Assembly (NCBI GenBank): GCA_051294905.1
Contig: CM119383.1
Location: 20,832,001-20,896,000 of the forward strand
Reading direction: 5' to 3'
Origin: Botryllus schlosseri
Taxonomy: Eukaryota
Length of the DNA: 64,000 nt
Each line of letters begins with the position of its first letter. The stretch's first letter is position 1. Shown here one piece after another: positions 20,427 to 53,187 of the stretch. The notes beneath the pieces are model-generated. The model worked only from the letters and a program-made list of their open reading frames with translations, searched no databases and was not told where the DNA came from. The translations under genes were made by a program, and so were the position numbers.

Positions 20427-20762
20427 TAGAGAATAAACAAAACTTGCAAATTTTTTTCGTCGGCATGAACTCAAACGTTACTTGTGCTTTCTGTTTCTTC
20501 GAATTCTTGTCGTTCGATACGCATTTGTCTTAGATGTCGCAGTATTTCTGGCGTTGTAATAATCAGTAAAGTATATCTTCAACTATACTATATTTCACGA
20601 AGTTGTCTGTGATATCTCCTAATTTGCGTTTACGGTAACATCATCCTCAATTTCTATGTAATCTAGCCGTATCAACTCTGATCACTTTTTATTTCGATAG
20701 CGTTGTTTTGCAAATGTTTAACAGTCGATGTTTTGTTTCTAAAACAGTACAGAAACTTAAAA

Positions 20763-21386: not shown

Positions 21387-21584
21387 GCACACGGAGTGAT
21401 AGCATGCAATGTCTTGCTTGTTTTACTTACTCTTGTTCGTCTTTTTGTCGTATGTTGTGTCTTTGTGTTGTTAGCGTATGCTTCTTCCTTGTTCTTCAAT
21501 AGTTCTTCGCTTATTTTCATTCCAATCTTTCAAGTAAATTGTTCGTTTTTAATAGATCGTTTGCAGTTTGGCCTTGTGATTCTT

Positions 21585-22200: not shown

Positions 22201-22299
22201 CAGTTAAGCACTTCTTACATGTTTCTATGTAGTGGCTTCCGTGTTATATCTACTTATTTATTTGCATAAGTATCTCTTTCTTGTATCATTACTACTAAT

Positions 22300-23112
22300 T
22301 AATTAACGTTTCTAGCACCCCCCACTTCTAGACGTCGTAGACACTTTATTTTGGTATCGTTAGAAAGGTCTCAGAAAACTCTCTTCGACGTATTTTTTGT
22401 CAAGTAGATTCGTCAAGTAGTTTTCGAGTAGTGGCTCTGTAAAGTAGTTTCAACGTAGTTTCAACCTCGTGAGTGCTCCCGACTTCATTTTTGTATCGTA
22501 CATTACTTATTGCAAGACCAATCTTCAGGCCAAGTATCAAGTAGATTCGTCAAGTAGTTTTCGAGTAGTGGCTTCGTAAAGTAGTTTCAACGTAGTTTCA
22601 ACGTCGTGAGTGCTATTGACTTCATTTTTGTATCGTTCATTACTTGTTGCAAGAGCAATCTTCAGTCCAAGTACCAAGTTATTTTGTCGAGTAACAAGCA
22701 TTTTATAGTACTTTTATTGTTTCGAAAGTGCTTTTAGCGATGTTCTGACGGCGCTACAGATGATTGCTTTCGGCATGAACTATCTATAGTAAAAATTTCA
22801 AGTAGATTGGTCCACGTCGGAAGAAGTTACGAAAGTCTTCGATTTTTCCCTGATATGTTTCCGCTATATGTATCCGGTTTTCATATCCGGATACGCTTTC
22901 AAACGAAAGCCCTATTCAATCTGCTTACGCTGAAAAAGATTTCATAGCTCTACGTGTTGTAGTTCTCCAGATATGCACGTTCAAGTAGTTTCAAAACTAC
23001 TTTTCAAGTACTACTTTTCAGCGGTTCATGCAAAATACTAGATATTTCGTCAGAAAATTCTATACAAGTCAAGAGTATTGCCCACGTTATTGTAGTTCAT
23101 TCACTTTAGCAC
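22300..23112. repeat. Block U (candidate 5'-terminal region) with internal about 135-bp AGTAG-rich repeats; second copy about 24170-24983
   Basis: tcaagtagttttcgagtagtggct..gtaaagtagtttcaacgtagtttcaac repeated within and between copies. Confidence 0.85.
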
Positions 23113-23115
23113 ATA

Positions 23116-23418
23116 TGTCTACTTTTAAATATTGTAATGTCGTGTTTGACTTACCACGAACTCCAGATGTACGCCAACGCGAATCAACTCTCGAAAACTG
23201 CCAACGACGAAATCGTGTCAAAAGAGTTTCACGAACGGTATGTACATCGTTTTCAATTCGATTCGCCACATTTCCTAGTCGTATTTATTTCAATATACAG
23301 GTTTTCACAACGCCTGCTGATGGCGGCGAACTTTGAAGCGGAGGGAAACAAAAAATACTCGTTCTCACGACGTCCGCTGATGGCGGCGAACTTCGACGCG
23401 GACACAAAAACAAAATAG
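23116..23418 (+). pseudogene. Family E paralog E2 (intron 23238-23300, frameshift near 23185)
   Basis: Homologous to 39315-39680 with the same 63-nt gtatgt...acag intron and the same terminal ...NFDADTKTK*. Confidence 0.65.
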
Positions 23419-25379
23419 TTTTTGCATATTTTCATCCTTTCCAATAACTTCTTCGTTTTTAATACATCGTTTTCATTGTGCCCTTGTTTCTCGTGATTCT
23501 TTGTCTGGATGCGTCGAATTAGACAGTAGTGTGGAGAAGGTAACAACGTTATCGGAAACTTAGTGGCAGGATAACGTCTTATTATAGCTATCGTGCCCTA
23601 AAGTTTTGCATATCGTGTTACAGATTTATAATTAGGGTTACAGTTACTAACATAATTTCAAACCAAGTATGCAGATGTCATATAGCTTCGTGCAAAAGCG
23701 ATATGGACGACGAAGTTATACGTATTGATTCACCAAAAAGTCCGAAGTTTGCGATTCAGGTGTGACGTGAACAGTATCGCCAATATGTGGAAAATTCAGC
23801 GCAGCATAGTTCAAATTACACCCATACGACGCCGAATTTTTCCATATTGAGACCCGCATTTCTCATGGGAAGTTCGTCGACTTCGGTGCGATCGATAAAA
23901 TTATACCAGGAGTAGCGTATCGTGTCTTAGTAGTAAACTACGCGATGCGATCGACCTGAAAGTCTGCCATGGGATGTAGTTCGACGATTGGGTGCCACAA
24001 ACAGACATCCCATGCACCTCGGGCGGGCTGGGCGCGGTTGTGACGTCATAATGGAGTAAAATCCGTTATTACATGTGACTATATGGTAACTACAGGGTTG
24101 GATCTACTTATACGAGTTTCATTAGACGTGTCTCTTTCTTGTAGCTATAATACTATTATAACTTTTCTGACACCCTATAGTTGCAGACATGCTAGACACT
24201 TCATTTTGGTGTCATTAGAAAGGTTGCAAAAAAATCTCCATCCGTTTTTTTTTTTCAAGTCTCTACTTCAAGTAGTTTTGGAGTAGTGGCTTTGTAAAGT
24301 AGTTTCAACGTAGTTTCAACATCGTGATAGCTACTGCCTTCATATTTGTATCGTACAATACTCGTTGCAAGAAAATTTTTCAGTCCAAGTATCAAGTAGA
24401 TTTGTCAAGTAGTTTTCGAGTAGTGGCTTTGTAAAGTAGTTTTGAGATATTTTCAACGCCGTGAGTGCTATCGAGTTGATTTTTGTATCGTTTAATACTC
24501 GTGGCAAGCTCAATCTTCAGTCCAAGTATCAAGTAATTTTGTCAAGTAACAAACATTTTATAGTTCTTTTAATATTTCGAAGTGCTTTCAGCGATGTTCT
24601 GATGGCGCTAGAGAGTTGATTTTTTCACGGATGATTGCTCTCGGCATGAACTATCTATAGTCAAAATTTCAAGTGGATTGGTCCACGTGGGAAGAAGTTA
24701 CGAAAGTCTTCGATGTTCCCAGGTATGTTTCCCGGATATGTATCCGGTTTTCATATCCGGATCCGCTTTCCAACGAAAGTCCTATTCAATGTGCTTACGC
24801 TGAAAAAGATTTCATAGCTCTAAGTTTCGTACTTCTCGAGATATGCACGTTCAAGTAGTTTCAAAACTACTTTTCAAGTACTACTTTTCAGCGGTTCATG
24901 CAAAATACTTCATATTTCGTCAAAAAATTCTATACAAGTCAAGAGTACTGCCCACGTTATTGTAGTTCATTCACTTTAGCACAGGATTTTATATATATTT
25001 ATTTTCATTAAAAAAACTACTTTTTGAAGTACTACTTTCCTGAGGTTCGGTGTAATCACTTAATTTTTGTCTAAGAGTGATCTACGGCCTCTCCTGAAGC
25101 CAGCGATGGCAAAAATTTCGGAATCGAAGATAAAAAATTGTCCGATTTTGTCGAATTTTTACTGAGTCCCACAACATTTTTTTTTATTTTTAAGCACATG
25201 TGCGCGTTCCCCTCTGTATTTGAAGATGCGCTGCAAAGGAATTTTTCAGATCCGACCACTATTACGATGTCTAGAGCCCGCTAAAGGTCCGATTTTGGCG
25301 CGCTTCAACCGGAGATATCTCGGCTCCGGTTGGTCCGAATTCGACAATTACTCCCGTCGTTTACCCGCCGTTTTCCCAA

Positions 25380-26470
25380 AAAAAATTATCAAATATTTTT
25401 TTCCCCCCCACACGAAGTTTGGAGTGTCTAGGACCAACTGGAGCCATTCTAGCCATGCGCGTGCGTTTGCGTTCGAGTCAGAATGAGTCAAAATTAGTCA
25501 ACTGAGCGCGCGCCTTTGCTTTCGAGTCAGAATGAGTCCCGCCGTTTACCCGCAAACATACGCATTACTCCCGCCGTTTTACCAAAAAAAAAAAATTATC
25601 AAATATTTTCCACCCCCACACGAAGTTTGGAGTGTCTAGGACCAACTGGAGCCATTCTAGCCATGCGCGTGCGTTTTCAATGAAAGCCGCGTCAGCTAGG
25701 TGGGGGGTGCTAGCGCGGTGCGTTTTCGCGCATCGTGCGGACGGATTTTTCGCTTGTGCGCGGCTTTCATTGAAAACGCGCCAGCATGGTGAGGGGTAGC
25801 AGCGCGGTGCGTTTTCTCGCATCCGCGATTGGTTGGTTTGTTCGGTTGTGCGCGGCTTTCATTGAAAACGCGCCAGCAGGGTGGGGGGTGGTAGCGCGGT
25901 GCGTTTTCGCGCATCGTGCGGACGGAATTTTCGCTTTTGCGCGGCTTTCAGAATGAGTCAAATGAGTGCGCGCGTTTGCTTTCGAGTCAGAATGAGTCAA
26001 AATGAGTCCAATGAGCGCGCGCCTTTGCTTTTGAGTCAGAATGAGTCCCGCCGTTTACCCGCAAACATAGGAATTACTCCCGCCGTTTACCCGCAAGGTC
26101 GAACGAAAAATTCAACTTTTCGAATTTTTTTTTTCGAAAAAAAATTTTTTTTTCTGAAAAAAAAATCAAATATTTTCCCCCCCACACGAAGTTTGGAGTG
26201 TGTAGGACCAACAGGAGCCATTCTAGTGATGCGCGTGCGTTTTCAATGAAAGCCGCGCCAGCTAGGTTGGGGGTGCTAGCGCGGTGCGTTTTCGCGCATC
26301 GTGCGGATGGATTTTTCGGTTGTGCGCGGCTTTCATTGAAAACGCGCCAGCTGGGTGGGGGGTGGTAGCGAGGTGCGTTTTCGCGCATCGTGCGGACGGA
26401 TTTTTCGGTTGTGCGCGGCTTTCATCGAATAAGCGCCAGCTGAGGGGAGGGGTCGTAGCGCTGCGTTGAA
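25380..26470. promoter_or_regulatory. Composite repeat array upstream of gene A3 containing TTTCGCGC (E2F-like) and TGAGTCA (AP-1-like) motifs
   Basis: About 90-bp GC-rich units. TTTCGCGC at 25724, 25905, 26290, 26379; TGAGTCA at 25484, 25954, 25993, 26032; AT-rich palindromes at 26115-26165. Regulatory role is inferred. Confidence 0.55.
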
Positions 26471-26540
26471 AATTGCAAAAAAAATTCTACCCGTTTACTA
26501 GCAAAATTCATGTTCACGTTCATTGTTTTTAGGCATTAAA

Positions 26541-27158
26541 ATGGAGGTGATATATGCTATGTACGATGAATGCATCGAAATTACTCTTTTCCGGCGTGAG
26601 CGAATGATCAAAGCGAGATTAATCATGAAGAATGGATACTTCGCTCGTGGCATTGTCATGAGCGACGTGGAAGTCGACAATACCGAGCCCGGCCGTCTCT
26701 TTCTCAGGATGAGACATGAAAATCCTTTACACAGAAATGTTATTGTCCCAACCAACTTACGTCCAATGGACAATGATTTCCACTCGCCTCGCAGTCGGTA
26801 CGTTGAAATCGTGCAAGGACATATCTTCATAAGTACTCACTTTAACGGCCGGTCAACTGTAGCCGCTCTTATGATAACAGAGGAATACAAAGCGCAGATG
26901 CTGGTGCTGTACGACGATCAGATGGTCATAACAGTGAATGGTATCGTCGAGTTGGTGAATTTGGTCGTCGATCGCTCGGCGAACGCTGATACCGTCATAC
27001 CGACGGACCGGAGCGGTCGACGACCAAATTTTGTTGCGACAGTTAATCGCACGCCCGCACTACCCGGACCGCCCATCGGACCGGTAATCCGGACTCTCGA
27101 GGGCGCGGCGGACAGGCCGAGGCGGGCCATCCGTGCCCCGGACCGATTGGATCTTTAA
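26541..27158 (+). CDS. Family A paralog A3, 205 aa, unknown function
   Basis: Intact ORF; ends RPRRAIRAPDRLDL*. Confidence 0.8.
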   Translation: MEVIYAMYDECIEITLFRRERMIKARLIMKNGYFARGIVMSDVEVDNTEPGRLFLRMRHENPLHRNVIVPTNLRPMDNDFHSPRSRYVEIVQGHIFISTHFNGRSTVAALMITEEYKAQMLVLYDDQMVITVNGIVELVNLVVDRSANADTVIPTDRSGRRPNFVATVNRTPALPGPPIGPVIRTLEGAADRPRRAIRAPDRLDL

Positions 27159-27866
27159 ATTATCAATTCATGTTGTAAACTTTCGTTTTAAATGCTTTAA
27201 AGTTCTTGTGACGACGATTTTTATGCCTTTTTATCTGCAATTTTAGTATCATCGACTTAAGTTAAGTTAATACAATTTTGTTTTGGTCACCTTTGCTGAT
27301 ATCATGTATTGCCTTATGTGTCGTCCTTATTTTTTGTTGGCCACTTGGTTCCTATATTTGTCTTGTTTTATGTTAATTTAAGTCCGATTTTATCGCTTTT
27401 ATCGCTTTTAACTGTCCATCGCAATATTCGTTTTTTAACTTTGAAACGCTTTATTTTTAATCGCTGTGTTTCATTTTCAGATCATATTATCATAGCGTTA
27501 CTGTTATGAAACACTAGATAACTACTGCAATGCGTTTACGACAGAATGGGGCAGAAAGAGGTCGGTCTCAGCCTGTCGGTACAGTGCGAGGGTGTCAAGC
27601 AGGGGTTGGAGTGAGGACGACTCTTCGTCAGAGAAGAAGTACTGTGTAACAGTACGTGAACTTTAGTCAGCATTGCGTTGTTCGATCACGCCGTGCTTTC
27701 TAAAGCTTTACTTACTGTTACATACTATCACAAAACTAATGTCAAATACTTGTGCGTTGTGCGCGGGTTTCACTGAAAACGCAATATGGGGGGGGGGAGC
27801 AGTCGTAGCGCGATTCGTTTCTGCAACGATACTTCATGTTCGTCTTCGTTTTTTTCAGAAATAAAC

Positions 27867-27910
27867 ATGGAAATTATCTGCAGTGCTTTCGATCGAAAAA
27901 TTCAGTTGTG
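27867..27910 (+). pseudogene. N-terminal stub of a further family A gene (MEIICSAFDRKIQL), body deleted
   Basis: Same ttttcag-aaata-ATGGA context as A1. Followed directly by a duplicate of the A3 3' flank (tgtcgtccttattttttgttggccacttgg). Confidence 0.55.
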
Positions 27911-28943
27911 TCGTCCTTATTTTTTGTTGGCCACTTGGTTCCGATATTTCTCTTCTTTTATGTTAATATTATTCCGATTTTATCGCTTTTACTGCTGTTA
28001 TCGCTATTACGTTTTTTCAACTGTGCTTTACATTAATCGCATGTTTCTTTTTCAGGTCTTATTATCATAGCGTTAGTGTAAACGTGTTCTCAAACACTAC
28101 TTAACCACTAATCGCTTGTTTCTTTTTCAGATCGTATTATCATAGCGTTAGGGTACACGTGTTCTGAAACACTAGTTAACCACTGATATGCGTCTTGAAC
28201 GGAATTGGACATAAAGATCATGGGGTGAAGTGAGGACGACGATGCGTGAGACAAGTACTGTGTAACAGTACGTATAATCTAGTTTACACGACGTTGTTCG
28301 ATCACGTCGTGCTTTCCGGATCTATATTTACTGTTTCATACTATCACAATACTAATATAAAGTAGTTGCGTACTAAGTGTTTGTGCTTGCAAGGTCATGC
28401 TACAGTGTCTTGCCTGTGTTGCATGTGCTTTCCTGAGTTTTACGTGCAAGGTTTGGCAAAATACTGCTTCGTGACATGTCTTTCGTTGTAGGGAAATTTG
28501 CTGGTGTGTGTCACTATGAACACTTCAAAGTGCATGCACCTGTTACTCAAGTTCATGTTCTGTGAAGTCAACATAGCGTTACAAAACATCGTAATAATGG
28601 TCGGACATAATCGAATTAAAGATGCTCAAGTTTTTGCGTAATACCGTGTAGTGGCGTTGTTACTGTTCTGCACATTTCATTCGCAAATCATGTAGATCAT
28701 TTACGTTTCATTTGTGCCTTTCAAGTTTATATATTACCATCCATCTTCTTTGCTTGAATAACATTTGGCCTTGCAGTTTTATTGTGCAAATCGTGTCATG
28801 CATCGAATTTGTTTCGCGTTTGTCAGGAACTTGCGTTTCAATTCTCTTTACGTTCGTTTTAATGACATTCATGTTGCTGTGTTGAATCGTGCTTTCAATT
28901 GCCAGTTGTATATGTTTACAGAAACTAAATCTATATCATTATA

Positions 28944-29342
28944 ATGACTAAATCGAACCCTACGGCCGGCGAAGGCTACTTCGAGCGGACTATAACTCGA
29001 ATTGACGACTTGCAACATCCTGAGATCGTTCAAACGGAAACGAAGATTTTACCGATTTCTGCTCATTCTGAACCTGGACCCGAACCGGTCCCTGATCCGG
29101 AGAATCCAGATGCTTATCTCCTGGTACCAGCCGACTTGAACGGGGAAGGTCGTGAAACGCTGATAAGTGCTGAGCAATATCTTGCTTGGTATCAAGATGG
29201 ATGTGGGTGGGATGGAGGTGGGTCGGCACAAGACACTCCGAAGGATGGCAATGGGGGAAACCTCTTCGAGGTGGTCAAACTGGCGAGGCCGAAAAATCAA
29301 GATGGCGAAGTCGTAAACTCAACGGCGTCTGCTGAACAGTGA
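28944..29342 (+). CDS. Family B paralog B3, 132 aa
   Basis: Intact ORF homologous to B1/B2, same terminal NSTASAEQ*. Confidence 0.8.
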   Translation: MTKSNPTAGEGYFERTITRIDDLQHPEIVQTETKILPISAHSEPGPEPVPDPENPDAYLLVPADLNGEGRETLISAEQYLAWYQDGCGWDGGGSAQDTPKDGNGGNLFEVVKLARPKNQDGEVVNSTASAEQ

Positions 29343-29674
29343 TTGATACCAAACAAAACTTGCAAATGTTTTTCGGCGGCATGAACTCGGACCTTACTTG
29401 TGCTATCTGTTTCTCGAATTCTTGTCGTTCGATACGCATTTCTCTTAGATGTCGCTGTATTTTGGCGTTTTAAAAATTAGTAAAGTACATCTTGAATTAC
29501 ACTACATTTCATGAAGTTGTCGTGATATTTCTTAATTTGCGTTTACGTTAACATCCTCCACAATTTGTACGTAATCTGGACGTATCAACTCCGATCACTT
29601 TTTATTTCGATAGCGTTGTTTCAAAGTGATTAACAGTCGATGTTTTGTTTCTAAAACAGTACAGAAACTTAAAA

Positions 29675-30931
29675 ATGTCTCATAGAACTCCGACTAAAAG
29701 CCCTTTCGGAAAGGAGAGGAGGAAGAATCCTGATTTCTCCGTCGATTGGTATCAGCATTTTCCGAAAGATTACCTGAGGCCTTACGGCCGGTCTGTCATT
29801 CCGGAGGACGTATCCGACGAATCTATCAACAGTAAATTGCAGACCTTTAGCTGCGAATGGTTAACAAGGCCGGCAGTTGCAGTGTCCGAGTTTGCCGAAA
29901 CGCTACTTCGAAATCGAAACACCAAGCCTGCTATCGAGGATATCATGGATCCGAGAGCTTTTCAACACTTCCACGCTCATCTCAATTCAGTCATCAACGA
30001 GGTGCGTCCTCTGTGGATAAGCCCAGCGAACCCGGCTGCCGAGGCGACTCTTACTAAAGAAGACGTGTCGGCAAGGTTTGAACGTCTCGAAAGTCTGATG
30101 ATGCAGCAAAAGTCGTCGTTCCTGGATCGGTATATTGATATCATGGCCGATTGCGGACACGCCATGTATGTGACCGCGCTTCATCTCAAGATGATATCGT
30201 TCTTGATGCGGAACAAAGACGCATGGGCCCTTAAATTTAGATCCCATCCCGATCACGAGAACTTTAAAAAGAATCCTAGCGCTCGCTCTTACGCTGAAAT
30301 GGTCTTTACCGGATATATGATCAAAAAAGGATTCAATGCCGCGCCCATCGAGACACCGGCCAGAAGAAGCATTTCCGATTTCATGCTGGACGAACCGTCT
30401 GTGCCCGTCACTTTGTCGCAATCACTTCCTACGCAAGGTACTGTGTCTGCCTCTGCTCCGGTTCCGTTTTCAGGACCTTCGCCGTCTTCCGTTTATGTAC
30501 CCGTTTCTGTTAATTATCCGGCACCTTTTTATCCACCTCCACCTTCCGTACCAGTTCGCATTGGAGTTTCGGGAATGGTTACTGCGCCTTCCCTTGTTTC
30601 TGCGCAAGTCCTAACAGGTGGTTCTCGAATGGCTGCAGGTGCGGCAGCGGTTTCTGGTCAAGAAATTCGAAGTCCGGCAGTGGTTTCAGCGGATCCTCTA
30701 CGATTGGCGCATGCTCGTCCGATGATTCGAGTTCCGGTTACGTTCCAATCGGATACCGCAGCAGTTAGAAATGTTGCTGGAGCGGCTGTTGAGGACGAAA
30801 ATGTTCCATGCTCTAGTGGCAGCGTTCAAAGTCAGCGTGCGTCTGCCGCTGTGAACAAGGAGAAACGAAGCATTACTGACAAGGCGGGAAAACCAAAGAA
30901 GAAAAAAAAGAAACGTGTAACTCAAGAATGA
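29675..30931 (+). CDS. Family C paralog C1, 418 aa (conserved about 210-aa domain, Pro/Ser/Val-rich linker, poly-Lys tail)
   Basis: Intact ORF; motif WYQHFPKD..R.YG...F.CEWL.RP..A.SEFAETL..N; ends KPKKKKKRVTQE. Confidence 0.85.
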   Translation: MSHRTPTKSPFGKERRKNPDFSVDWYQHFPKDYLRPYGRSVIPEDVSDESINSKLQTFSCEWLTRPAVAVSEFAETLLRNRNTKPAIEDIMDPRAFQHFHAHLNSVINEVRPLWISPANPAAEATLTKEDVSARFERLESLMMQQKSSFLDRYIDIMADCGHAMYVTALHLKMISFLMRNKDAWALKFRSHPDHENFKKNPSARSYAEMVFTGYMIKKGFNAAPIETPARRSISDFMLDEPSVPVTLSQSLPTQGTVSASAPVPFSGPSPSSVYVPVSVNYPAPFYPPPPSVPVRIGVSGMVTAPSLVSAQVLTGGSRMAAGAAAVSGQEIRSPAVVSADPLRLAHARPMIRVPVTFQSDTAAVRNVAGAAVEDENVPCSSGSVQSQRASAAVNKEKRSITDKAGKPKKKKKKRVTQE

Positions 30932-31081
30932 ACTGACGTGTTTCATATCTCGTGTTTTTGTGATTTGTCAAACTTTAACTTTCATTTTCTTGTTCGTTTG
31001 TTATGCTTTCGTAAATTTTATTCGTTTCTTGTTACAGATTATTAATCGTAGAACTAGCTGTGACTCTAACTGAAATACGAT

Positions 31082-31786
31082 ATGAGCAAGCAATCGAAGA
31101 CATCGTCAAGCCGACTGCTGTTGTCTCCAGATGATGTTTCACATGCGAATAGGATCGTCGCCGACCTGCGCAAGATATTTCCTGACATGCGTCTGGACCA
31201 TTACTTATTGCGATTCAATTGTCGTCCCACCAATGTTCACCATCCATTGCTCATGTTGGCTCTATACCGAGAGATGACCCGCCATCAGGTATTCGTTACC
31301 ATGATTACTGAATCGTTACGACCTGCGGTAATATTGCCGCAGGATGCGTTGCGTGCCAGCCGTAGTACTCAAACGTTAACGGCGTCACTACCGACTGATC
31401 TGAATGCTTTTCTGCATCGATCCGCTTCTCCGGAGCTTCCAGTATCTTCGCACTTTTCTGTACAACTGCAGACATCTCCTAAAGCGGAACGACGTTCGTC
31501 TCCTAATGACCTGCTCAAGGCTGAAGAGCACGATGATGTACCAACGGTTTCGGTTATGCCACGGAAACGTGTTAAAGTCGAGAGAAGTTGTCAAACGGAA
31601 AGTGATATCAGTGGGATGTCCCCGTGTGCATCGAGCGAATCGAGCGAGTCGGGCGCATCGGACGAACCGTCTCTGCCGTGTGCAATTGACGATTCCAGCA
31701 GTCAGTCAGCGGCTGTATGCGAACAGCAGAAGCGGTCCGCCACTAATGAAGCAGGAAATCAAAAGAAAAAAAGAAAAAGTCTTTGA
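31082..31786 (+). CDS. Family D paralog D2, 234 aa, basic C-terminus
   Basis: Intact ORF homologous to D1. Confidence 0.8.
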   Translation: MSKQSKTSSSRLLLSPDDVSHANRIVADLRKIFPDMRLDHYLLRFNCRPTNVHHPLLMLALYREMTRHQVFVTMITESLRPAVILPQDALRASRSTQTLTASLPTDLNAFLHRSASPELPVSSHFSVQLQTSPKAERRSSPNDLLKAEEHDDVPTVSVMPRKRVKVERSCQTESDISGMSPCASSESSESGASDEPSLPCAIDDSSSQSAAVCEQQKRSATNEAGNQKKKRKSL

Positions 31787-32137
31787 CCTGTGACATGTCA
31801 CATTTTAAAGTTGCGATGCATTGCTCGTCGATATTGTCATCTCTAACTTTCGTTTTATGTCATTATCGTGTGTTACGTTCGTTATTTCGTTCGCCTGGCT
31901 TGCCGCTTTCTGCTTTTTAATGTACCTTCGCTATGCTTTAGCTGATTTCATTTCTCTATTGTCGCACCCATTTATGTGTGTCATATCACCCGCAACGTTC
32001 GTTACTTAATGTATTCGTTCTAATGTATTCGTTCAGTACAGACTGATAACTGTAAATACACGTGTCTTTTGCGAGTACTAATAGTTTCACGCTCTTCTTT
32101 ATTTTCCAGAAAATACAATAGCAGTCTAATAGCTAAA

Positions 32138-33367
32138 ATGTCTTATAGAACTCCGACGAAGAGTCCTTTCGGAAAGGAAAGGAGGAAGAATCCTGATTTC
32201 TCCGTCGATTGGTATCAGCATTTCCCGAAAGATTACCTGAGGTCTTACGGTCGGTCTGTGATTCCGGAAGACGTATCCGACGAGTCTATCAACAGTAAAT
32301 TGCAGACCTTTAGTTGCGAATGGTTAACAAGGCCGGCAGTTGCAGTGTCCGAGTTTGCCGAAACTCTACTCCGAAATCGCAACACCACGCCTGCCTTCGA
32401 GGATCTCATGGATCCGAGAGCTTTCCAACAGTTTCACGCTCATCTGAATTCCGTCGTCAACGAGGTCGGTCCTCTGTGGGTAAGCCCAGCGAACCCGGCT
32501 AGCGAGGCGACTCTTACTAAAGAAGACGTGTCGGCGAGGTTCGAACGCCTTGAAAGTCTGATGATCCAGCAAAAGTCGTCGTTCCTGGATCGATATATCG
32601 ATGTTATGATCGATTGCGGACACGCCATGTATGTGAGTGCGCTTCATCTCAAAATGATGTCGTTTTTGATGCGGAACAAAGACGCATGGGCCCTCAAATT
32701 TAGATCCCATCCCGATCACGAGGACTTTAAAAAGAACCCGACCCCTCGCACTTACGCTGAAATTGTCTTTACTGGCTACATGATCAAGAAAGGCTTCAAT
32801 GCAGCTCCGATCGAGACCCCGGCTAGAAGACGCATTTCCGATTTCATGCTCGACGGTCCATCATCTTCGTCTGTGTCGGTGGGAGTCGTTCCAGATGTTC
32901 GATCTCCTGTTTCGGCTCAAGTTCCGCAAGCTCCCGTTCCGTCTCAAACACAGGCACCAGTCCGTGTGCATGAGCATGGTGTCGCCTATCCTGTCGTGCA
33001 GATACCTGTTCCTGTTCAGGTCACGCATCATTCACAATCCCCTCTTTCTTCCGTACAGTTGGCATCGGTTCCGGTTACTCGTCCTGCACAGAATGCTGCT
33101 TCAATGGTTCCGACACTGGATCGATCGGATACCGAGCCGTATGTACCTGCTACTCAAACCGTCAGGGAAGCTGCTCCTTTGTCGACTAATCAATCGGTCT
33201 CGTCAACATCTGTTCCAAGTGCTGCATCTGATGAGGAGAGCGTAGCATGTTCCAGTAGTAAAGTGAAAAGGAAGTCCGCATGTGTTCTCGAATCCAAGAA
33301 GCGAAGCAAAGTTGACAAGGCGGGAAAGCCAAAGAAGAAAAAGAAGAAACATCTCATTCTGGAGTGA
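32138..33367 (+). CDS. Family C paralog C2, 409 aa
   Basis: Intact ORF; N-domain very similar to C1, different low-complexity linker, ends KPKKKKKKHLILE. Confidence 0.85.
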   Translation: MSYRTPTKSPFGKERRKNPDFSVDWYQHFPKDYLRSYGRSVIPEDVSDESINSKLQTFSCEWLTRPAVAVSEFAETLLRNRNTTPAFEDLMDPRAFQQFHAHLNSVVNEVGPLWVSPANPASEATLTKEDVSARFERLESLMIQQKSSFLDRYIDVMIDCGHAMYVSALHLKMMSFLMRNKDAWALKFRSHPDHEDFKKNPTPRTYAEIVFTGYMIKKGFNAAPIETPARRRISDFMLDGPSSSSVSVGVVPDVRSPVSAQVPQAPVPSQTQAPVRVHEHGVAYPVVQIPVPVQVTHHSQSPLSSVQLASVPVTRPAQNAASMVPTLDRSDTEPYVPATQTVREAAPLSTNQSVSSTSVPSAASDEESVACSSSKVKRKSACVLESKKRSKVDKAGKPKKKKKKHLILE

Positions 33368-33380
33368 TATCGTACGCATA

Positions 33381-33778
33381 TCGTATTGTTGCAAATGTGG
33401 ACTCACTTTCGACCCGTAAATTTCCCTACCTTCCATACGCATGTCGTGTGTTACGTTTAGTAATTCTGTTAGGTTTATTACTGAAATGCTTCGTTGAACG
33501 CCTGTTTCTTTTTCGTTGTAGTAGTCGATTTAAAAAGCTTTTGCTTTATAACGTATTTTGTCTTTATGTAAATATTGCCTCGTATTGTTGCAAATGTGGA
33601 CTCACTTTCGACCCGTAAATTTCCCTACCTTCCATACGCATGTCGTGTGTTACGTTTAGTAATTCTGTTAGGTTTATTACTGAAATGCTTCGTTGAACGC
33701 CTGTTTCTTTTTCGTTGTAGTAGTCGATTTAAAAAGCTTTTGCTTTATAACGTATTTTGTCTTTATGTAAATATTGCT
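33381..33778. repeat. Apparently perfect 199-bp tandem duplication between C2 and RepHel
   Basis: tcgtattgttgcaaatgtggactcac starts at both 33381 and 33580. Confidence 0.9.
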
Positions 33779-33891
33779 TCGATTCGTTCTGTTCTTTTTC
33801 CAGTTGCTAGTTACAGTTACCTAATGTTACAAGTCATGTGATCTACTTGAAGGTTCATACCGAACACCACATCATATAGAGACATATCATA

Positions 33892-36800
33892 ATGTCTGGC
33901 AACACAATTATAATCGATTCGGAGGTGAGTTTCCATTTCTTTACTGTTTCTTTTGACAATGCAATGTTTGTGTCGTACAGGCCTCGTCTAGGCGTGATGC
34001 AGAAGTGGCCCGTTCCGCCGAGAGGATGGAGCGGTCTCGTATCTTAGCTCGTGCTTATTTCGGAGGCACGTTGCTACCGGAAGCCGATCAATCGTCTCCT
34101 GCAATGACATCTGCCGATAAAATACGTCGTTGGATCATCAGACATAGTTGGAAGGAGTGCGACGTGTGCGGTTCCGTTCTCCCTTGCATCATGACACCCG
34201 GAATCATGACTGACTGGACGCGTGCCGCCAGCACCGAGATGTCCTTGTCGTCGTTCTGGCTATCGTATCCCCAGGTTATCGGATTGGCCAGACGTTTTAC
34301 GTGGTCTAACGCGTTCCGATCACGATGTTTTGGCATTATATCGTCTGTCTGTTTTACGGTTCCTCGCCTCGTCAACAACACGGATATCGAGAGAAGAACG
34401 GTCCTGTGAGAGCTTGTCTCGTTTCCGAATCTGTACAAGACAGGTTGGAGGCAATCGACGATCCTGTCATACGAGATCGCGTGGACGCGGCATATCGCTA
34501 CCTCTTGCAATGCCCAGACAGCGCCTATGGGTTAATGGATTCTCATCATCGCGACGGAATTCTGCCGTCGCGTCTCTCGGTTGGAAGGCTATGTCGGGTA
34601 ACGCAATCATAGAGTCGTCAGAACAGGCTGATAATAGATGTCAGACATACTCTTTTCAGTTTCATTATGTGGAGACCGGTCTGTGGCCGCTCCTCTATCC
34701 TTTCAAGTGGCAATGCGAGTCTGTTGTCGAAGACGAAGGAGCTCGAAAGAGCGCCAAGCGAATGTACTGCCTCAAACTTACGTGTTCCGTTTTCGATTAC
34801 TGCGGGATGTTTTCCTTGCTGAGGTATCAATACGACAGGTGCGTAGGGACTTTTTTCCTCGTATTACACATCGATATGTTTCTATATGTTGCCAGATGGA
34901 TCTACAAGACGGTGACGGGCGCGTTAAACGATGCCGGTAGCTTTCATTGCTCGCCTGCACGCGCGCTAGACAGTAAGACGTTCAGTGCCACGTACTGGAA
35001 ATGGCAACTAAGTTATGTTTTGGACGCTGTCAAACAATATGGAATGCCGGATATCTTTATCACCATTTCGCCGTACGAATGGCAATTTCCGGACAACGAA
35101 ATACTTCTCGATCGTTTTGTGACTCTTGGACGTGGCCCGACTGGTCTCGCAGCTATCGAATCTATGCATCAAGCACATGTTCTCGAAGAAATCCTTCGCA
35201 AGTATGTTTCTGGAAAACAAAAGCACCGTTGGACCAGACACTTACTGCGCAACACCCGGACCGGTGCTAACAACGTTCACACCTACTTTTATAGGCAAGT
35301 ATCGTTTTTCCTAAAACTTGACGGCGTCATGTATATTCTTTTGCTTTTTTACGACAGATTCGAGTTTCAAAAGCGTGGAACACTGCACGCGCATTATATT
35401 GCCTGGTTGGAGGACGTTTCTTCTCTAAATATATCGGATCTATCTGCGGATCTGCCGCAAGAAGACAACGATTTTGCGGAGTTGGTATACACTGTGCAAA
35501 AGAGCAATAAACGAGTTGCTGGCATTGAAGTTCACGACGGCCCCTCGCAAGTAGAAACCGTTTCTGACGTTCCTACCCTTGTGTTGCACAGATCTCAGGC
35601 CGCGCACCGATTGAACTTACGTGTGTACTCTGAAACTCTGCTACGTACATTGCGGTGTGCCATGGACGTCCAGCTCAGCGACGGCAATAACATGCTAATG
35701 AAGTACGTCGCTGGCTATGTTTCGAAATTTCGAGAAACATCGGTTCCGCGAGACGTTCTCTTCAGCGATTTGGAGCCTAACACTATCGCCTATCGATATC
35801 TCAATCAATTATGTCCTGACGAGCCCGAAATGATACTGACTCTGGCCGACTTCAAAATGGCCTATACCTGTTCGGATACTAAAAGGTATCTGGTACCGAC
35901 GTTGGAACGTGCCCGTGAGGATAAGGTAGTTAAGGCATATATGTCTCGTCCGTTATTCGAAGAAAACATGACGATGTATGAATACCTACACCGGTACACG
36001 GTTACTGATGACCGTGGTCATCGACGCAGGTCGCAGAAAGATCTTCTGGTTGGATTCAAATTCCTCGATATGTTCACCGATGGCTATTTCTTTCAAGATG
36101 CAATCTTAAACACTCCCTTCAGGAACTTGGACCACTTGGAATTGAATGACTTTCAACGTTTGCCTCAAGACATTCGTCTGTTCTCGTTCGCTGTTCACAA
36201 CAGAGCATCGTTCTGGCAAGACAAAGACGCAGTCATACGACTTTGTAATGAACGTGGAAGCAAGAGATATTACACTGTTACATTTTGCGCTTATCTGGAC
36301 AGTCTCTTTGCCGTTTGGCGGCGTTATTTCCATATGGAAATTCCTCATTCTGCTCTCGACATTCAGGAATACAGCGACCAACCGAGTACGTGCTTGTCAC
36401 CACATCAGGCCGCGTTCGTCAACACGGTAGTGGAAAGATTGAGATGCTTCTCCGAGAGGGATGCCGAAGCCGTTGAAAATCAAGACGAAGAAGACGAATT
36501 CGATCGACCCTATTTTCTACTCTGCGGTGAGCACGGAACAGGTAAATCGTACTGTTTGTCGGAGATCATAAAAAAGGCCGTCCGATTGGCTTCCAAGATC
36601 CTTGTGGTTACGCCTACCGGTTTGTTAGCTACAACGTACAAAGCCTTGTTCGGAGACGACATAACGGCAGACACCGTGCACGCAGCGTTTCGGTTGGCTT
36701 CAGGCGTGGAAGGTCATCGAGCAAACGTTAACTGGAATATACGTCTCTTCGATCTTATTCTGATGGACGAGATCTCGATGGTTTCAGTAGTCCATGGAGA

Positions 36801-37627
36801 TCACATCTCATCGACACTTGCCTCTTTTGAGTCAACATTGCGTCGTCGTACTTTGTGGCGATCAACACCAACTTCAGCCGGTACCTGTCGATGGTTATAC
36901 CGGCAGCCTTTTCGATCACCGACAATTAATGGGACGTTGCAATGATACTCGTTTGCGCAGTCAATTTCGTACGAGAGATAACGAACTGTCGGACTTTCTG
37001 CGAATTTGTCGCTTAAGAACGCCGTCTGCGGCGGAAATACGTCAATTCGCATCCGGGATCGTTCTTTTAGACGACGATTCTCCATCTGACGAAGACTTGA
37101 TTCATGTGCATGATGAATACCCGGAACATGTTGTTCTTACATTTACCCGTCATTCGGCCAGGCGGTTCAATGAAGTCGTTCGCAATCACGTTTACAAGGG
37201 TGTTTTTCCTGTCAAAATGTGTCGTTATCCAACTGCTGATAGTCAGCTACGACCAGTTTATGAAGGCATGCCGATCATGTTGACGGAGAATCGAAACAAG
37301 AAGCGGTCATTCGTCAACGGTCAAATTGGTCGGATACACAGTGTCATCGCTAATACGATATTGGTAGAACTGCCCGATGATAGACTGATACGAGTGTATC
37401 CAATAACAAAGCCCGAAGGTGTTTATTTTCCTTTCATGTTGCGGCACGCCGGTACCATTCACAAGGCACAAGGTCAGACGTTGTCGTCCGCGATCCTCTG
37501 GTTTGATTCTAGCAACGTGAGCCCCGGTTGCGCGTATGTAGCCATGTCTCGTGTCAGATGCAAGGACGATCTTCGTTTCTTGACTACGCCGACGATACGT
37601 CACTTCAAACCTGCCGTGTCAAACTGA
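33892..37627 (+). pseudogene. Helitron-type Rep (HUH, Y2) / PIF1-family SF1 helicase; introns 33925-33980, 34839-34895, 35295-35357; about 4 frameshifts
   Basis: Rep motif 1 PDIFITISPYEW; motif 2 YFYR|FEFQKRGTLHAH after splicing; motif 3 KYVAGYVSK. Helicase: Walker A GEHGTGKS, Walker B LMDEISMV, CGDQHQLQPV, TIHKAQGQTL, AYVAMSRVR. N-terminal CxxC...CxC. Shifts near 34215, 34350, 34590, 36823. Confidence 0.92.
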
Positions 37628-38004
37628 CGACACGCGTTGACGACACTGTTGTTACCTTGTATTTTAGTGATCCGTTTATGTCACTTAAATCCTGGTTTGT
37701 CGATGTGGATGGCAGGATATCCATGTCGTATATTTTTTGGGCTATCATATCTTGTTGCTTGTTTCTTCTATATGTGTCCAGTGACTGCTTGCTCCAGTGC
37801 CTTTATCGACCTTTCATTTTTACTTATATTCCTCCCGTATTTCCTTCAAAAACATGTGCTAATATCTGTTTTATCTTTCGTTTCGTGTTATCAGTTAGAC
37901 TTGCGTACCATGCGATGACGTTTCATTGGAGTGACTTATTTGCAGTATCACACTTTCATAATCATTCACGATTTTATTTGCAGATACTCGTGCTTAACAT
38001 TACA

Positions 38005-38883
38005 ATGGCTAGCTTTGTGACTAAAATTGACGACGGTAAAGTTGCTGAAAATGAGGAACGTGGAGGCGTTGTTGAATGGTGTCAGCAATTTCCAAAAGAC
38101 TTCCTTCGGATGTATGGTCGATCGGTGCAACGGGAAGACATCACTGATGACAAGTTCGATGCAAAGCTTCATCACTTTAACTGTGAATGGCTGTCAAGGC
38201 CATCTGAAGCCATGTCTCAATTTATCCAAACTTTAGCCAGCAATCATGACTTCGGAAAACCGCTAAAGGAATTGCTCAACAATGCTTCATATAATACCTA
38301 CCAGGTACATCTTGGACACATACTAAGTCAGGTTCAGCCGCTGTGGGTTAGTCCGGCTAATCCCGAAAACGAAGTTACTCTAAGCCTTGCTGATGTTCAC
38401 GAACGGATGAACAACCTGGATCAAGTACTTGATTACGAGAATTCACCGTTTTTTTAACGGTACATCGAAGTTATGATCGAAGCCGGGAACGCATTATATC
38501 TGAACGGCATTCACCTTTTGGCACTGAGTTTCCTACTGCGAAACAAAAACAAGTGGGCAGGTAAGCTTAGGGCCCATATCGACAACGAAGAGTTTAAAGC
38601 AAATGCAACCACTGAAAACCTCGCAAGCAACCTGTATCGTGGATATGTCATTCGTAAAGGCATGAATGACACAACGCATGTGTCTCCTGAACACTCCGCA
38701 CCGGCTACGGCTGAAACCTTTCCGGTTCCGATACTGGTGCGTTCTGATACAGAGCCGATCGAAGATGCTATTCAAACTGCTTCATGCGACCAAGCCAATG
38801 CGCAGCATGATCCGGCTCTTCAAAATGCCGTCCAGACACCGAGCCAGTTGCTGGACCTTCTGTTAAAAAGACAAGAAAAATAG
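38005..38883 (+). pseudogene. Family C paralog C3 (divergent, shorter), single in-frame TAA at 38455-38457
   Basis: WCQQFPKDFLRMYG...FNCEWLSRPSEAMSQF. Track ORFs 37528-38457 and 38473-38883 share one frame. Confidence 0.85.
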
Positions 38884-39314
38884 GCACACGGAGTGATAGC
38901 ATACAATGTTATTGCTTGTCTTTCTTGTTTCGCGTACCATTGTTCGTCTTTTTGTAGTATGTTGTGGCTTTGTGGTAATACCGTTTGCTTTTTCCTTGTT
39001 CTTGCGTTGCATGTTCTGGCTTTCCTGTAATCTCGTATACGAAATCCCTTTACGAAAAACAACGAAGGTACGCTTATTTCCAGATAATCGTGCGTTTCCG
39101 TGCATTCGAGATTCCGTTCATTTCACCTAAATCCTGGTTTAACGATGTGGCCATAAGGATATCCCTGTCGTATATTCTTTGAGCTGTCATTTCTCGTTGC
39201 ATGTATATTCTTTATCGTAACCCTTGTCAGTACTTTTCGTGCTTTGAATGATACAAGTTTATCATTCGTTGTCGGTACTAATGGCGCTCATTTGATTTCC
39301 AGAAAAAACTAGAT

Positions 39315-39680
39315 ATGTCATTTAAATCCGAAGTCCTGTGGCACTCCCAGCCAATGGAACATCAACGCGAAATCTGCACCAACATTCCAGTCTCCAAAAC
39401 TAGGAACGAAAAAGTCGTATCACACGATCCTAACCAAAGGTATGTCACATATTTTTTTTTCGATTCGCTGTATTACCTACTCGTATTTATTTCAATTTAC
39501 AGGTTTTCACAACGTCATCTGATGGCGGCGAACTTCGAAGCGGAGGTAAACAAAAAATACTCCTTCTCACGACGTCCGCTGATGACGGCGAACTCCGTAG
39601 CGGAGGGAAACAAAAAATACTCGTTCTCACGACGTCCGCTGATGGCGGCGAACTTCGACGCGAACACAAAAACAAAATAG
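39315..39680 (+). CDS. Family E gene E1 (about 100 aa after removing intron 39440-39502) with in-frame 20-aa repeats
   Basis: Acceptor tttccag at 39302 then ATG; gtatgt...ttacag intron; 60-bp tandem repeats encoding KKYSFSRRPLMAANFEAEGN-like units; homolog at 23116. Confidence 0.6.
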   Translation: MSFKSEVLWHSQPMEHQREICTNIPVSKTRNEKVVSHDPNQRYVTYFFFDSLYYLLVFISIYRFSQRHLMAANFEAEVNKKYSFSRRPLMTANSVAEGNKKYSFSRRPLMAANFDANTKTK

Positions 39681-40527
39681 TTTATTGCATATTTTCATCC
39701 TTTCCAATAACTTATCCGTTTCTAATACATTGTTTTCATGGTGGCCTTGTCACTTGTGATTCTTTGTGATGATGCGTCGAGTGTAGTGTTGATAAGGTAA
39801 CAACGGTATGTTAAACTTTACCGGCAGGATAGCGTCTTATTATAGCTAACGTGCCCGAAAGTTTTGCGTATCGTCTCACATATTTATCATTTACACGGTT
39901 AGTAACGTGATTTCAATACGAACAACTTGCAGGTCATATAGCTTCGTGCAAAAGCGATACGGTCTACGAAGTCATACTCATTGATTCACTTGTGCGTTGA
40001 CAGAAGGCTAAATACTTCGACGGAGGAGCGGATAACGTGTGAAGTGTACAAATCAGGTGTGACGTGCTGACGTAGATAGTATCGACAATAGGGCAAAATT
40101 CAGCGCAGCATAGTTCAAAGTACACCCATACGACGCCGAATTTTTCCATTTTGAATCACGTATTTGTCATTGTATGATCGTCGACTTCAGCGCGATGAAT
40201 AGCGATAGACCAGGACTCTAGGAGAAGCGTATCGTGTCTTATGCGTATACTGAACGATGCGATCGACCTGAAAGTCTGCCATGGGATGTAGTTCGACGAT
40301 TGGGTGCCACAAACAGTCATCCCATGCACCTCGGGCGGGCTGGGAGCGGCTGTGACGTCATAATCGAGTAAAATCCGTTATCCCTGTGGTAACTTTTCTT
40401 ACCTACCCTCAGAACACTTGAATGTGACCTGGAGGATCGGCAAACTGATAGTCTGCCTGGAGGATATTTTACATTGAAACGGTATGAAGACATGAACAAA
40501 GAAGAAAATCCAATGGACTGCCTGGAG

Positions 40528-53141: not shown

Positions 53142-53187
53142 TTAACTAAAACAAAGCATTGCAATTGTCGCAACCCTGTGTTGACGC

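What the first reader, a model, noticed from the sequence alone, without database searches (positions are those of the whole stretch)
24075..40391. Giant Helitron-type element carrying its own five-family gene cluster
Seen: a Rep/PIF1 gene sits inside a tightly packed, same-strand cluster (A, A-stub, B, C1, D, C2, RepHel, C3, E). Most accessory ORFs are intact, 100-420 aa. The order A-B-C-D recurs at 2.9-7.9 kb and A-B-C at 18.4-21.4 kb. Established: Helitrons capture host gene fragments, but these are usually random pieces. Inference: full-length, syntenic, repeatedly duplicated genes look like a dedicated accessory repertoire, closer to a Polinton- or virus-like element built on an HUH replicon. 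None of A-E is recognisable to me.
Basis: partly seen in the sequence, partly recalled or inferred. Interest (0 to 1): 0.92.

Follow-up and report, generated by a model that had tools for sequence, protein, structure and literature searches.

The report
Helitron-like transposon with conserved partner gene
The region is a decayed 16-kb copy of an unusual rolling-circle (Helitron-like) transposon whose replication gene always travels with one partner gene of unknown fold; this pairing seems undescribed, but the element is not virus-like and only part of its "gene cluster" is real.

Summary
A Rep/Pif1-helicase gene lies in a same-strand ORF cluster at 24069-40381. The order A-B-C-D recurs at 2.5-8.2 kb and A-B-C at 18-22 kb.

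The five families are unequal:
- C is real. It is under strong purifying selection (omega 0.12-0.21). It is an all-alpha protein with no Pfam, PDB or viral fold match, and the family has 418 clusters in public data. It lies directly beside RepHel in relatives: 13 of 15 informative metagenome loci, five further contigs and Ciona intestinalis.
- A is a real coding gene, present as anciently diverged alleles, with no homologues found.
- B is weakly constrained.
- D evolves neutrally.
- E is a 60-bp minisatellite read as an ORF.

The RepHel here is broken (about three frame changes), and so are C3 and several genes of copy 1.

Three units lie head to tail (ends at 22200, 24069, 40381), one of them a 1.9-kb ends-only derivative.

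No capsid, polymerase, integrase or packaging gene was found, and no relatives were found in viral contigs. The Polinton/virus-like reading is therefore not supported.

Best reading: a divergent Helitron-like lineage with a two-gene core (RepHel + C), here enlarged by lineage-specific ORFs. In some hosts its relatives live inside rDNA units.

The parts
24069..40381 (+). Main element copy (copy 3): X' 5' region, satellite, A, A-stub, B, C1, D, C2, RepHel, C3, E repeat, 3' tail
   Evidence: The homology break at the 3' end is shared with two other units. The 5' region is shared with the mini unit.
24069..24983 (+). X': 5'-terminal region, including a 137-bp x2 repeat at 24268-24548
   Evidence: 84% identical to 22215-23113, the 5' part of the mini unit. 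It starts right after the preceding unit's 3' end.
25364..26467 (+). Internal satellite of 89-92-bp units upstream of A; also present at 17952-18166 in copy 2
26541..27158 (+). Gene A (205 aa), intact: an anciently diverged allele of a coding gene; no homologues found
   Evidence: 34-43% aa identity to the two other copies. Codon position 3 identity is 0.27-0.35 against 0.49-0.69 at positions 1 and 2. No hits in Pfam, PHROGs, PDB or the protein database. The structure model is unusable, pLDDT 37.
27867..28070 (+). A-stub: a truncated remnant sharing about 14 N-terminal residues with A, inside a local duplication
28944..29342 (+). ORF B (132 aa), intact; weak constraint
   Evidence: omega 0.52-0.80; the bootstrap interval lies below 1 in 2 of 3 pairs. 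Codon-position signal is not significant. No Pfam, PHROG or PDB hit.
29675..30931 (+). Gene C1 (418 aa), intact: conserved all-alpha N-domain of about 235 aa, then a Pro/Ser-rich tail and a Lys-rich C-terminus
   Evidence: omega 0.12-0.21 in the N-domain. 418 family representatives. AF2 model pLDDT 85. No Pfam, PDB or BFVD match.
31082..31786 (+). ORF D (234 aa), open but evolving neutrally
   Evidence: omega 0.98-1.02 and no codon-position signal. No hits.
32138..33367 (+). Gene C2 (409 aa), intact: recent paralogue of C1, upstream of RepHel
   Evidence: 91% DNA identity to C1 over the N-domain; omega 0.12. C lies upstream of RepHel also in L005 and in Ciona L010.
33381..33781 (+). 199-bp x2 tandem duplication (99% identical) between C2 and RepHel
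33981..37627 (+). RepHel gene (CxxC...CxC N-terminal region, HUH-Y2 Rep, Pif1-type SF1 helicase). Broken: at least 2, probably 3-4, reading-frame changes; no stops inside the aligned pieces; catalytic motifs still present
   Evidence: Pfam hits. 32-39% identity to 9 homologues, including Ciona XP_026695284. Frame count. The HxH, YxxxY and Walker A columns are invariant or nearly so in alignment A4, which includes the window copy. The A4 profile matches Pif1 helicases at 1e-28 and Helraiser at 9e-19.
38005..38883 (+). Gene C3: an anciently diverged C paralogue in the canonical position just downstream of RepHel. Broken: one internal stop
   Evidence: About 41% aa identity to C1/C2, with synonymous sites saturated. 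Same position as C in L001, L004, L011, L012 and 13 metagenome loci.
39315..39680 (+). 'E': an ORF that reads through a 60-bp minisatellite (39503-39662); not regarded as a gene
   Evidence: the same repeat occurs at 23301-23417
39676..40381 (+). 3'-terminal region (tail), with a 9-bp inverted repeat, a TGACGTCA palindrome and a possible terminal hairpin
   Evidence: 79-84% identical to 21498-22200 and 23414-24069. Homology stops at 40381. Folding is not significant overall.
22200..24069 (+). Mini unit (1.9 kb): X + E repeat + tail, i.e. both ends of the element with the interior deleted; abuts its neighbours head to tail
17952..22200 (+). Copy 2: satellite, A (intact), B (intact), chimeric C (C1-type front, C3-type back), tail. 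A deletion derivative that lacks X, D, C2, RepHel and E
2536..8242 (+). Copy 1: A (one frameshift), B (shorter), C (one frameshift), D (one insertion of about 530 bp). No recognisable ends
44242..51575 (+). Older, heavily decayed remnants of the same kind of element (C, RepHel, C and RepHel fragments), same strand
51537..53264 (+). 28S rRNA gene fragment in two pieces, split by a 1.57-kb element with 199-bp terminal inverted repeats, directly after the last RepHel remnant

Best explanation
**What it is.** The region is a degenerate, autonomous-type copy of a divergent Helitron-like rolling-circle transposon. The conserved core of this lineage is two genes: RepHel (zinc-finger-like N-terminus, HUH-Y2 nuclease, Pif1-type helicase) and an adjacent companion gene C.

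**How it most likely works (inferred by analogy with Helraiser).** Rep nicks at the element's ends and the helicase peels off one strand. The strand is circularised and re-inserted. Read-through, or insertion next to a resident end, yields the head-to-tail arrays seen here and in relatives.

**Role of C (inferred).** C is an all-alpha protein of unmatched fold with a disordered tail and a lysine-rich C-terminus. I take it to be a nuclear cofactor needed by this lineage, for example in handling or targeting the DNA intermediate. This rests only on its strict linkage to RepHel and its purifying selection.

**The other ORFs.** In this genome the unit has roughly doubled in size. It gained an extra block: A (a real protein-coding gene present as anciently diverged alleles), B (weakly constrained), a duplicated C, and D (no detectable constraint). 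E is a minisatellite.

**State of this copy.** It can no longer supply RepHel as it stands.
For: **Shown:**
- RepHel domains and motifs.
- Only distant relatives exist; the best is 39% identical, from Ciona.
- C lies next to RepHel on the same strand in L001, L004, L005, L010, L011 and L012. It does so in 13 of 15 informative loci that were fetched by RepHel alone.
- C N-domain omega is 0.12-0.21.
- The C family has 418 representatives at E<=1e-3. The model is confident (pLDDT 85).
- A has a coding signature.
- Three 3' ends are shared, two 5' regions are shared, and there is an ends-only mini unit.
- Relatives also show direct repeats with 7.9-8.6-kb periods.

**Inferred:** the transposition mechanism, the role of C, and that the 16.3 kb moved as one unit.
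Against: - Termini rest on only 2-3 copies, all in one window. They match neither the canonical 5'-TC/CTRR-3' pattern nor terminal inverted repeats.
- The two 5' ends both abut a 3' end, so a local tandem duplication of tail+X would look the same.
- A, B and D were not found in any related locus, so their belonging to the mobile unit is shown only within this window.
- No functional clue for C came from sequence or fold.
- RepHel is broken here.
Confidence: 0.7

Rival explanations
1. Composite or nested array. The 16.3 kb is not one transposition unit. An A-B-C1-D block (a separate non-autonomous family, or a captured or duplicated segment) sits in front of a canonical unit of about 8 kb (C2-RepHel-C3-tail). 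The repeats in the window arose by local duplication and unequal recombination rather than by transposition of the whole.
For: - Relatives have units of about 8 kb with only RepHel + C.
- A-B-C-D occurs without RepHel at 2.5-8.2 kb.
- Copy 2 is clearly a C1/C3 recombinant.
- All copies lie on one strand within 50 kb.
- A behaves as a swapped cassette.
Against: - No tail-like 3' end lies between D and C2.
- Copy 2 joins A-B-C directly to the same tail as copy 3.
- X precedes A in copy 3, and the mini unit keeps only X and the tail, as expected if these are the ends of one unit.
Confidence: 0.2
2. One reading: a virus-like or Polinton-like element built on an HUH replicon, with A-E as a dedicated (possibly structural) gene repertoire.
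For: - Compact same-strand ORFs.
- C and A are genuine conserved coding genes of unknown function.
- Head-to-tail junctions equal what a circular form would give.
- Relatives show unit-length periodicity.
Against: - No capsid, polymerase, integrase, protease or packaging ATPase signature in any ORF.
- The C fold has no match among viral predicted structures.
- No RepHel or C relative in 2.9 million IMG/VR contigs.
- E is a repeat and D is neutral.
- Relatives carry only RepHel + C, inside chromosomes and rDNA units.
Confidence: 0.05
3. A-D are ordinary host genes in a segmentally duplicated region, into which a Helitron happened to insert.
For: - A, B and D have no link to RepHel outside this window.
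- The region is a repeat-rich area with other transposons.
Against: - C is RepHel-linked across many organisms.
- Copies share the element's tail.
- None of the window's proteins that were looked up (A, B, C1, C2, D and the 597-aa ORF at 60528-62318) is in the protein collection. A has no homologue.
- Several copies are decayed, like transposon copies.
Confidence: 0.05

Closest known systems
Canonical Helitrons (HLE1; e.g. Helraiser/Helibat)
   Same: - One large protein with a zinc-finger-like N-terminus, an HUH nuclease with two tyrosines and a Pif1-family helicase. The A4 profile hits Helraiser 7LCC at 9e-19 and Pif1 helicases at 1e-28.
- No terminal inverted repeats.
- Non-autonomous derivatives keep only the ends.
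- Head-to-tail arrangements.
   Different: - Pfam Helitron_like_N and PIF1 scores are marginal (28-45 and 27-38 bits).
- The ends are not 5'-TC/CTRR-3'.
- A second conserved gene (C) is strictly linked to RepHel, which is not a feature of HLE1 as described in PMC11417382.
Helentron / Helitron2 (HLE2)
   Same: RepHel-type transposase. Accessory ORFs at conserved positions are known in some subgroups (RPA, OTU and others; PMC11417382). Tandem-repeat-rich interiors.
   Different: No DUF6570 marker, no endonuclease domain, and no short terminal inverted repeats.
Plant Helitrons with an RPA-like accessory gene (e.g. the Mothra family, PMC4683698)
   Same: This is the precedent for a conserved accessory gene carried alongside RepHel, rather than random captured fragments.
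   Different: That accessory gene is a recognisable ssDNA-binding RPA homologue of host origin. C has no detectable homologue outside this element family and has an unmatched all-alpha fold.
Telomere-targeting Helitrons of Paramecium, proposed as a third clade (PMC13085455)
   Same: A divergent RepHel lineage outside the usual HLE1/HLE2 picture. It carries minisatellites and has a strong preference for a repeated chromosomal compartment.
   Different: A different compartment: telomeric repeats there, rDNA units for some relatives here. A companion gene like C is not reported in the passages read. Relationship to that clade was not tested.
Polintons/Mavericks
   Same: Only the superficial picture: a 15-20-kb mobile element with several same-strand ORFs.
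   Different: None of the defining genes is present: protein-primed polymerase, retroviral-type integrase, jelly-roll capsids, protease, packaging ATPase. Replication here is of the HUH type.

Membership tests
Helitron-like elements (superfamily) | A single RepHel protein: HUH nuclease with a two-tyrosine motif, fused to a Pif1-family SF1 helicase | tested here: met
   Helitron_like_N plus AAA_19/AAA_30/PIF1 hits in the window copy and its homologues. The HxH and YxxxY columns are invariant and Walker A nearly so. Pif1 structures match at 1e-28 and Helraiser at 9e-19. The Pfam Rep score of the window copy (28.3) is just under the cut-off (28.9); its homologues pass.
Helitron-like elements (superfamily) | Insertion without target-site duplication, and non-autonomous copies that share both ends | tested here: inconclusive
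   An ends-only mini unit exists. Only one junction with unrelated flank (40381) is in the window, so the target site and absence of duplication cannot be judged.
HLE1 (canonical Helitron) | 5'-TC start; 3' hairpin followed by CTRR; insertion between A and T | tested here: not met
   Units start near TACATGT and end near CCGTTAT. A possible 8-bp terminal hairpin is seen in 2 of 3 ends and is not significant on folding. This rests on 2-3 ends only.
HLE2 (Helentron/Helitron2) | Short terminal inverted repeats plus a 3' stem-loop; T-T insertion | tested here: not met
   The best 5'/3' inverted match scores no better than shuffled sequence.
HLE2 (Helentron/Helitron2) | DUF6570 domain upstream of Rep (marker proposed in PMC11417382); endonuclease domain in Helentrons | tested here: not met
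   No such Pfam hit in the window ORFs or in full-length homologues P0002, P0006, P0011.
Polinton/Maverick | Protein-primed DNA polymerase B, retroviral-type integrase, major and minor jelly-roll capsid proteins, maturation protease, FtsK-type ATPase, terminal inverted repeats | tested here: not met
   No Pfam or PHROG hit of these kinds in any ORF of 24-40 kb. No terminal inverted repeats. The fold of A could not be judged.
Eukaryotic ssDNA (CRESS-type) viruses | HUH Rep fused to a superfamily-3 helicase, plus a capsid gene, on a small circular genome | tested here: not met
   The helicase is SF1 Pif1-type. No capsid was detected. No relatives in IMG/VR.
RepHel + C lineage (defined here) | A C-family gene directly adjacent to RepHel on the same strand | tested here: met
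   In the window, C2 lies upstream and C3 downstream of RepHel. The same adjacency holds in 13 of 15 informative metagenome loci and in L001, L004, L005, L010, L011 and L012.

The most novel reading that the evidence does not exclude
RepHel + C marks a third, so far undescribed lineage of Helitron-like elements. Its features would be: a transposase only marginally recognised by the Helitron and PIF1 profiles; an obligatory second protein with a new all-alpha fold; non-canonical ends; head-to-tail arrays; and, in several hosts (two protist-like rDNA contigs and Ciona), residence inside or beside ribosomal DNA units. In this genome it would also have recruited a cassette gene (A), kept as anciently diverged alleles that are exchanged between otherwise similar copies.
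Probability: 0.4. Interest if true: 0.75.

Novelty: new variant of a known kind. Interest (0 to 1): 0.6.

Why it matters
Helitron accessory genes are usually treated as occasional captures of host genes. Here one gene with no host counterpart and no known fold is almost always found beside a divergent RepHel, across many organisms. That points to a two-protein rolling-circle transposition system, not the single-protein model derived from Helraiser.

The finding also names a sizeable family (418 clusters) that has no annotation. It gives a concrete marker for finding such elements, which profile-based tools would score near or below threshold. The rDNA residence of some relatives, if general, would add a DNA-transposon counterpart to the rDNA-specific retrotransposons.

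For annotating this genome, the practical result is simpler. The region is an old nest of decayed transposon copies, not a set of host genes or a provirus.

Tried and rejected
- **Canonical Helitron ends and HLE2-type terminal inverted repeats:** not found.
- **Folding of the three 3' ends:** no significant structure overall.
- **Sequence searches of A, B, C1, D and RepHel against PDB:** nothing, except through the RepHel profile.
- **Pfam on all cluster ORFs and on 83 C-family members:** nothing for A-E.
- **PHROGs:** nothing.
- **Fold search of the confident C model against PDB and BFVD:** best E about 0.4-1.3, TM below 0.25, i.e. no match.
- **Word-based homologue search for A:** none.
- **AF2 model of A from three sequences:** pLDDT 37, so it was not used for fold search.
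- **Exact look-up of the window's proteins, to identify the source genome:** not in the collection. The organism stays unknown.
- **Rfam and tRNA scans of the window:** only one 28S fragment and hairpin-type chance hits.
- **Profile searches for A, B, D and E in 57 related loci:** none, even at E<=10.
- **IMG/VR scans with C and RepHel:** none.
- **C-alignment scan of metagenome contigs:** The RepHel alignment was used instead.
- **A search for a third conserved gene in relatives by all-against-all ORF comparison:** dominated by alternative-frame and antisense ORFs of RepHel, so uninformative.
- **'Single multi-exon gene A-B-C-D':** rejected. C homologues are stand-alone proteins that start at the same methionine.

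Full report

Yes.
- A: 2876-3649, 18414-19028, 26541-27155.
- B: 4512-4820, 19989-20423, 28944-29339.
- C: 5306-6567, 20763-21383, 29675-30928 (C1), 32138-33364 (C2), 38005-38880 (C3).
- D: 6722-8242, 31082-31783.
- E: 23110-23415, 39315-39677.
- Rep/helicase gene: 33981-37624 (Helitron_like_N, AAA_19, AAA_30).

The 'A-stub' (27867-28067) shares only about 14 N-terminal residues with A.

The window as a whole is transposon-rich eukaryotic DNA: two reverse-transcriptase fragments, a DUF4371 hAT-like gene and a Plavaka-like transposase. Its organism could not be identified, because none of its proteins that were looked up is in the protein collection.

**2. Units and ends**

The DNA comparison shows three related copies.
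- Copy 1 (2536-8242) is collinear with copy 3 from the 3' part of A to D.
- Copy 2 (17952-22200) carries A, B and a chimeric C. Its front is C1-type (98.5% aa identity) and its back is C3-type, followed by the same 3' tail as copy 3. It is therefore a deletion derivative that lost D, C2 and RepHel by C1/C3 recombination.
- The tail (39676-40381) recurs at 21498-22200 and 23414-24069. An alignment of the three ends shows homology running to a shared end and then stopping at 40381.

At 22200 and 24069 the tail is followed at once by a second shared region, X (22215-23113 and 24069-24983, 84% identical). So 22200-24069 is a 1.9-kb unit made only of X, the E repeat and the tail. That is the typical look of a non-autonomous derivative that keeps both ends.

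Copy 2, the mini unit and copy 3 lie head to tail without spacer.

Caveats: there are only two 5' ends and both abut a 3' end, so a local duplication of tail+X cannot be excluded. The ends are neither 5'-TC/CTRR-3' nor inverted repeats. Folding of the 3' ends is not significant.

Farther right (44.2-51.6 kb) lie older fragments of C and RepHel on the same strand. The whole 2.5-51.6 kb stretch is therefore a one-orientation nest of this element type.

**3. The Rep/helicase gene**

Its relatives are few and distant. A word-based search of 5.8 billion proteins gave nine, the best 39% identical: Ciona intestinalis XP_026695284.

Full-length relatives are about 1150-1230 aa. They carry conserved CxxC...CxC cysteines, an invariant HxH, an invariant YxxxY and a Walker A motif. 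The window copy keeps these.

A profile of the family matches bacterial and human Pif1 helicases (1e-28 to 1e-21) and Helraiser (9e-19) among solved structures. Pfam scores for Helitron_like_N (28-45 bits, C-terminal half of the model only) and PIF1 (27-38 bits) are marginal. The HLE2 marker DUF6570 is absent. It is thus a Helitron-like RepHel by architecture, but a divergent one.

In the window the gene is broken. Chaining of translated matches to eight homologues shows at least two, and probably three or four, changes of reading frame, with no stop inside the matched pieces.

**4. Family C is the real discovery**

- *Selection.* Between copies the roughly 235-residue N-domain has omega 0.12-0.21, with bootstrap intervals far below 1. 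Third codon positions are much more diverged than first and second.
- *Family size.* An exhaustive profile search found 418 cluster representatives (E<=1e-3; 129 at <=1e-10), mostly 200-450 aa. None of 83 members has a Pfam family.
- *Fold.* With this alignment AlphaFold2 gives a confident all-alpha model (pLDDT 85, pTM 0.71). It has no significant match in the PDB or among predicted viral structures. The domain is followed by a Pro/Ser-rich tail and a lysine-rich C-terminus, which suggests a nuclear protein.
- *Linkage to RepHel.* C lies immediately next to RepHel on the same strand in unrelated sequences:
  - downstream in L001, L004, L011 and L012;
  - upstream in L005 and in Ciona intestinalis chromosome AP043574.1 (L010, XP_078487882);
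  - in 45 metagenome loci fetched with RepHel alone, 15 have a complete RepHel 3' end and at least 700 bp beyond it, and 13 of these carry C within -60 to +723 bp on the same strand.

The window has both arrangements at once: C2 upstream and C3 downstream of RepHel. C3 is an ancient paralogue (about 41% identity to C1/C2, synonymous sites saturated) and now carries one internal stop. RepHel + C is therefore a conserved two-gene core.

**5. The other families**

- *A* is a genuine coding gene. The three copies are only 34-43% identical in protein and random at third codon positions (0.27-0.35). They keep 0.49-0.69 identity at positions 1 and 2, and two of the three keep open frames (the copy-1 allele has one frameshift). 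Strikingly, the flanks of A are 80-90% identical between the same copies. A thus behaves as a cassette of anciently diverged alleles exchanged between otherwise similar elements. No homologue was found and the three-sequence model is unusable.
- *B* shows weak constraint (omega 0.5-0.8).
- *D* shows none (omega about 1, no codon-position signal).
- *E* is an ORF through a 60-bp minisatellite.
- Profiles of A, B, D and E find nothing in any of the 57 related loci. These ORFs are therefore specific to this genome's version of the element, if they belong to it at all.

**6. Virus-like?**

No. No ORF of the cluster matches a capsid, polymerase, integrase, protease or packaging ATPase family. Neither RepHel nor C has relatives in IMG/VR contigs. 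Relatives are chromosomal.

Relatives have units of about 8 kb with RepHel and C only. They also show unit-length direct repeats (L027, 7.9-kb period; L021/L022, 8.6 kb), which suggests head-to-tail arrays as in the window. At 16.3 kb the window copy is about twice that size. From general knowledge, it is not outside the range known for Helitrons.

**7. Side finding: ribosomal DNA**

- In L001 and L011 the RepHel-C pair lies inside a complete rDNA unit, convergent with and directly after the 28S gene. In L001 a second 28S 3' fragment lies on its other side.
- In Ciona (L010) the pair lies among three partial 28S copies.
- In the window the last RepHel remnant is followed by a 28S fragment (51537-51600 and 53167-53264).
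- The short metagenome loci show no rDNA, so the association is not universal.
- I found no paper describing rDNA-resident Helitron-like elements in the searchable library. Site-specific (telomeric) Helitrons have been described in Paramecium (PMC13085455).

**8. Verdict**

One family (C) is a dedicated companion of this Rep clade, and A is a real gene. But the 'five-family repertoire' shrinks to two or three genes, the copy is decayed, and nothing supports a virus- or Polinton-like nature. I file it as a new variant of a known kind: a Helitron-like element with a conserved second gene.

**Transparency**

- Early ORF tables and my working reasoning exposed roughly where reading frames of broken genes change. 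Those places are not repeated here.

Noticed in passing
L001:3932-16850; L011:11559-20151; L010:2295-18873; window 51537-53264: Relatives of the RepHel + C pair sit inside or beside ribosomal DNA. In two contigs they follow a complete 28S gene in convergent orientation. In Ciona intestinalis they lie among partial 28S copies. In the window a 28S fragment follows the last RepHel remnant. The short metagenome loci show no rDNA.
   Followed up: partly
window 51575-53145: A 1.57-kb element with 199-bp terminal inverted repeats (95% identical) splits the 28S rRNA fragment. It may be an rDNA-inserting DNA transposon or MITE.
   Followed up: no
window 2876-3400, 18414-19028, 26541-27155: Gene A is saturated at synonymous sites between copies whose flanking DNA is 80-90% identical. 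It looks like an exchanged cassette of ancient alleles. No explanation was tested.
   Followed up: partly
L027:431-1132 and 8377-9073; L021:253-1289 with L022:4722-5748: Related elements in metagenome contigs show direct repeats one unit length apart (7.9 and 8.6 kb). This implies tandem (or circular) arrangement there too.
   Followed up: partly
window 45558-46759: A satellite array with a period of about 70 bp (copies 82-89% identical), between the main element and the older remnants.
   Followed up: no
window 373-891, 11803-14823, 15054-16913, 60528-62321: Other transposon genes: an LTR-type reverse-transcriptase fragment, a DUF4371 hAT-like gene in pieces, a LINE reverse transcriptase, and an intact 597-aa Plavaka-like transposase ORF.
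   Followed up: partly
window 54231-54356, 54633-54813, 56845-57009: Long perfect or near-perfect palindromes that give sub-threshold 'microRNA' hits in Rfam. They are most likely MITE-like hairpins.
   Followed up: no
L010:14848-17307 and 18671-20725 (minus strand); L009:439-1053: Large ORFs between the partial 28S copies in Ciona, similar to an ORF upstream of a C gene in L009. They may be an rDNA-specific retrotransposon sharing the same compartment. Not scanned.
   Followed up: no
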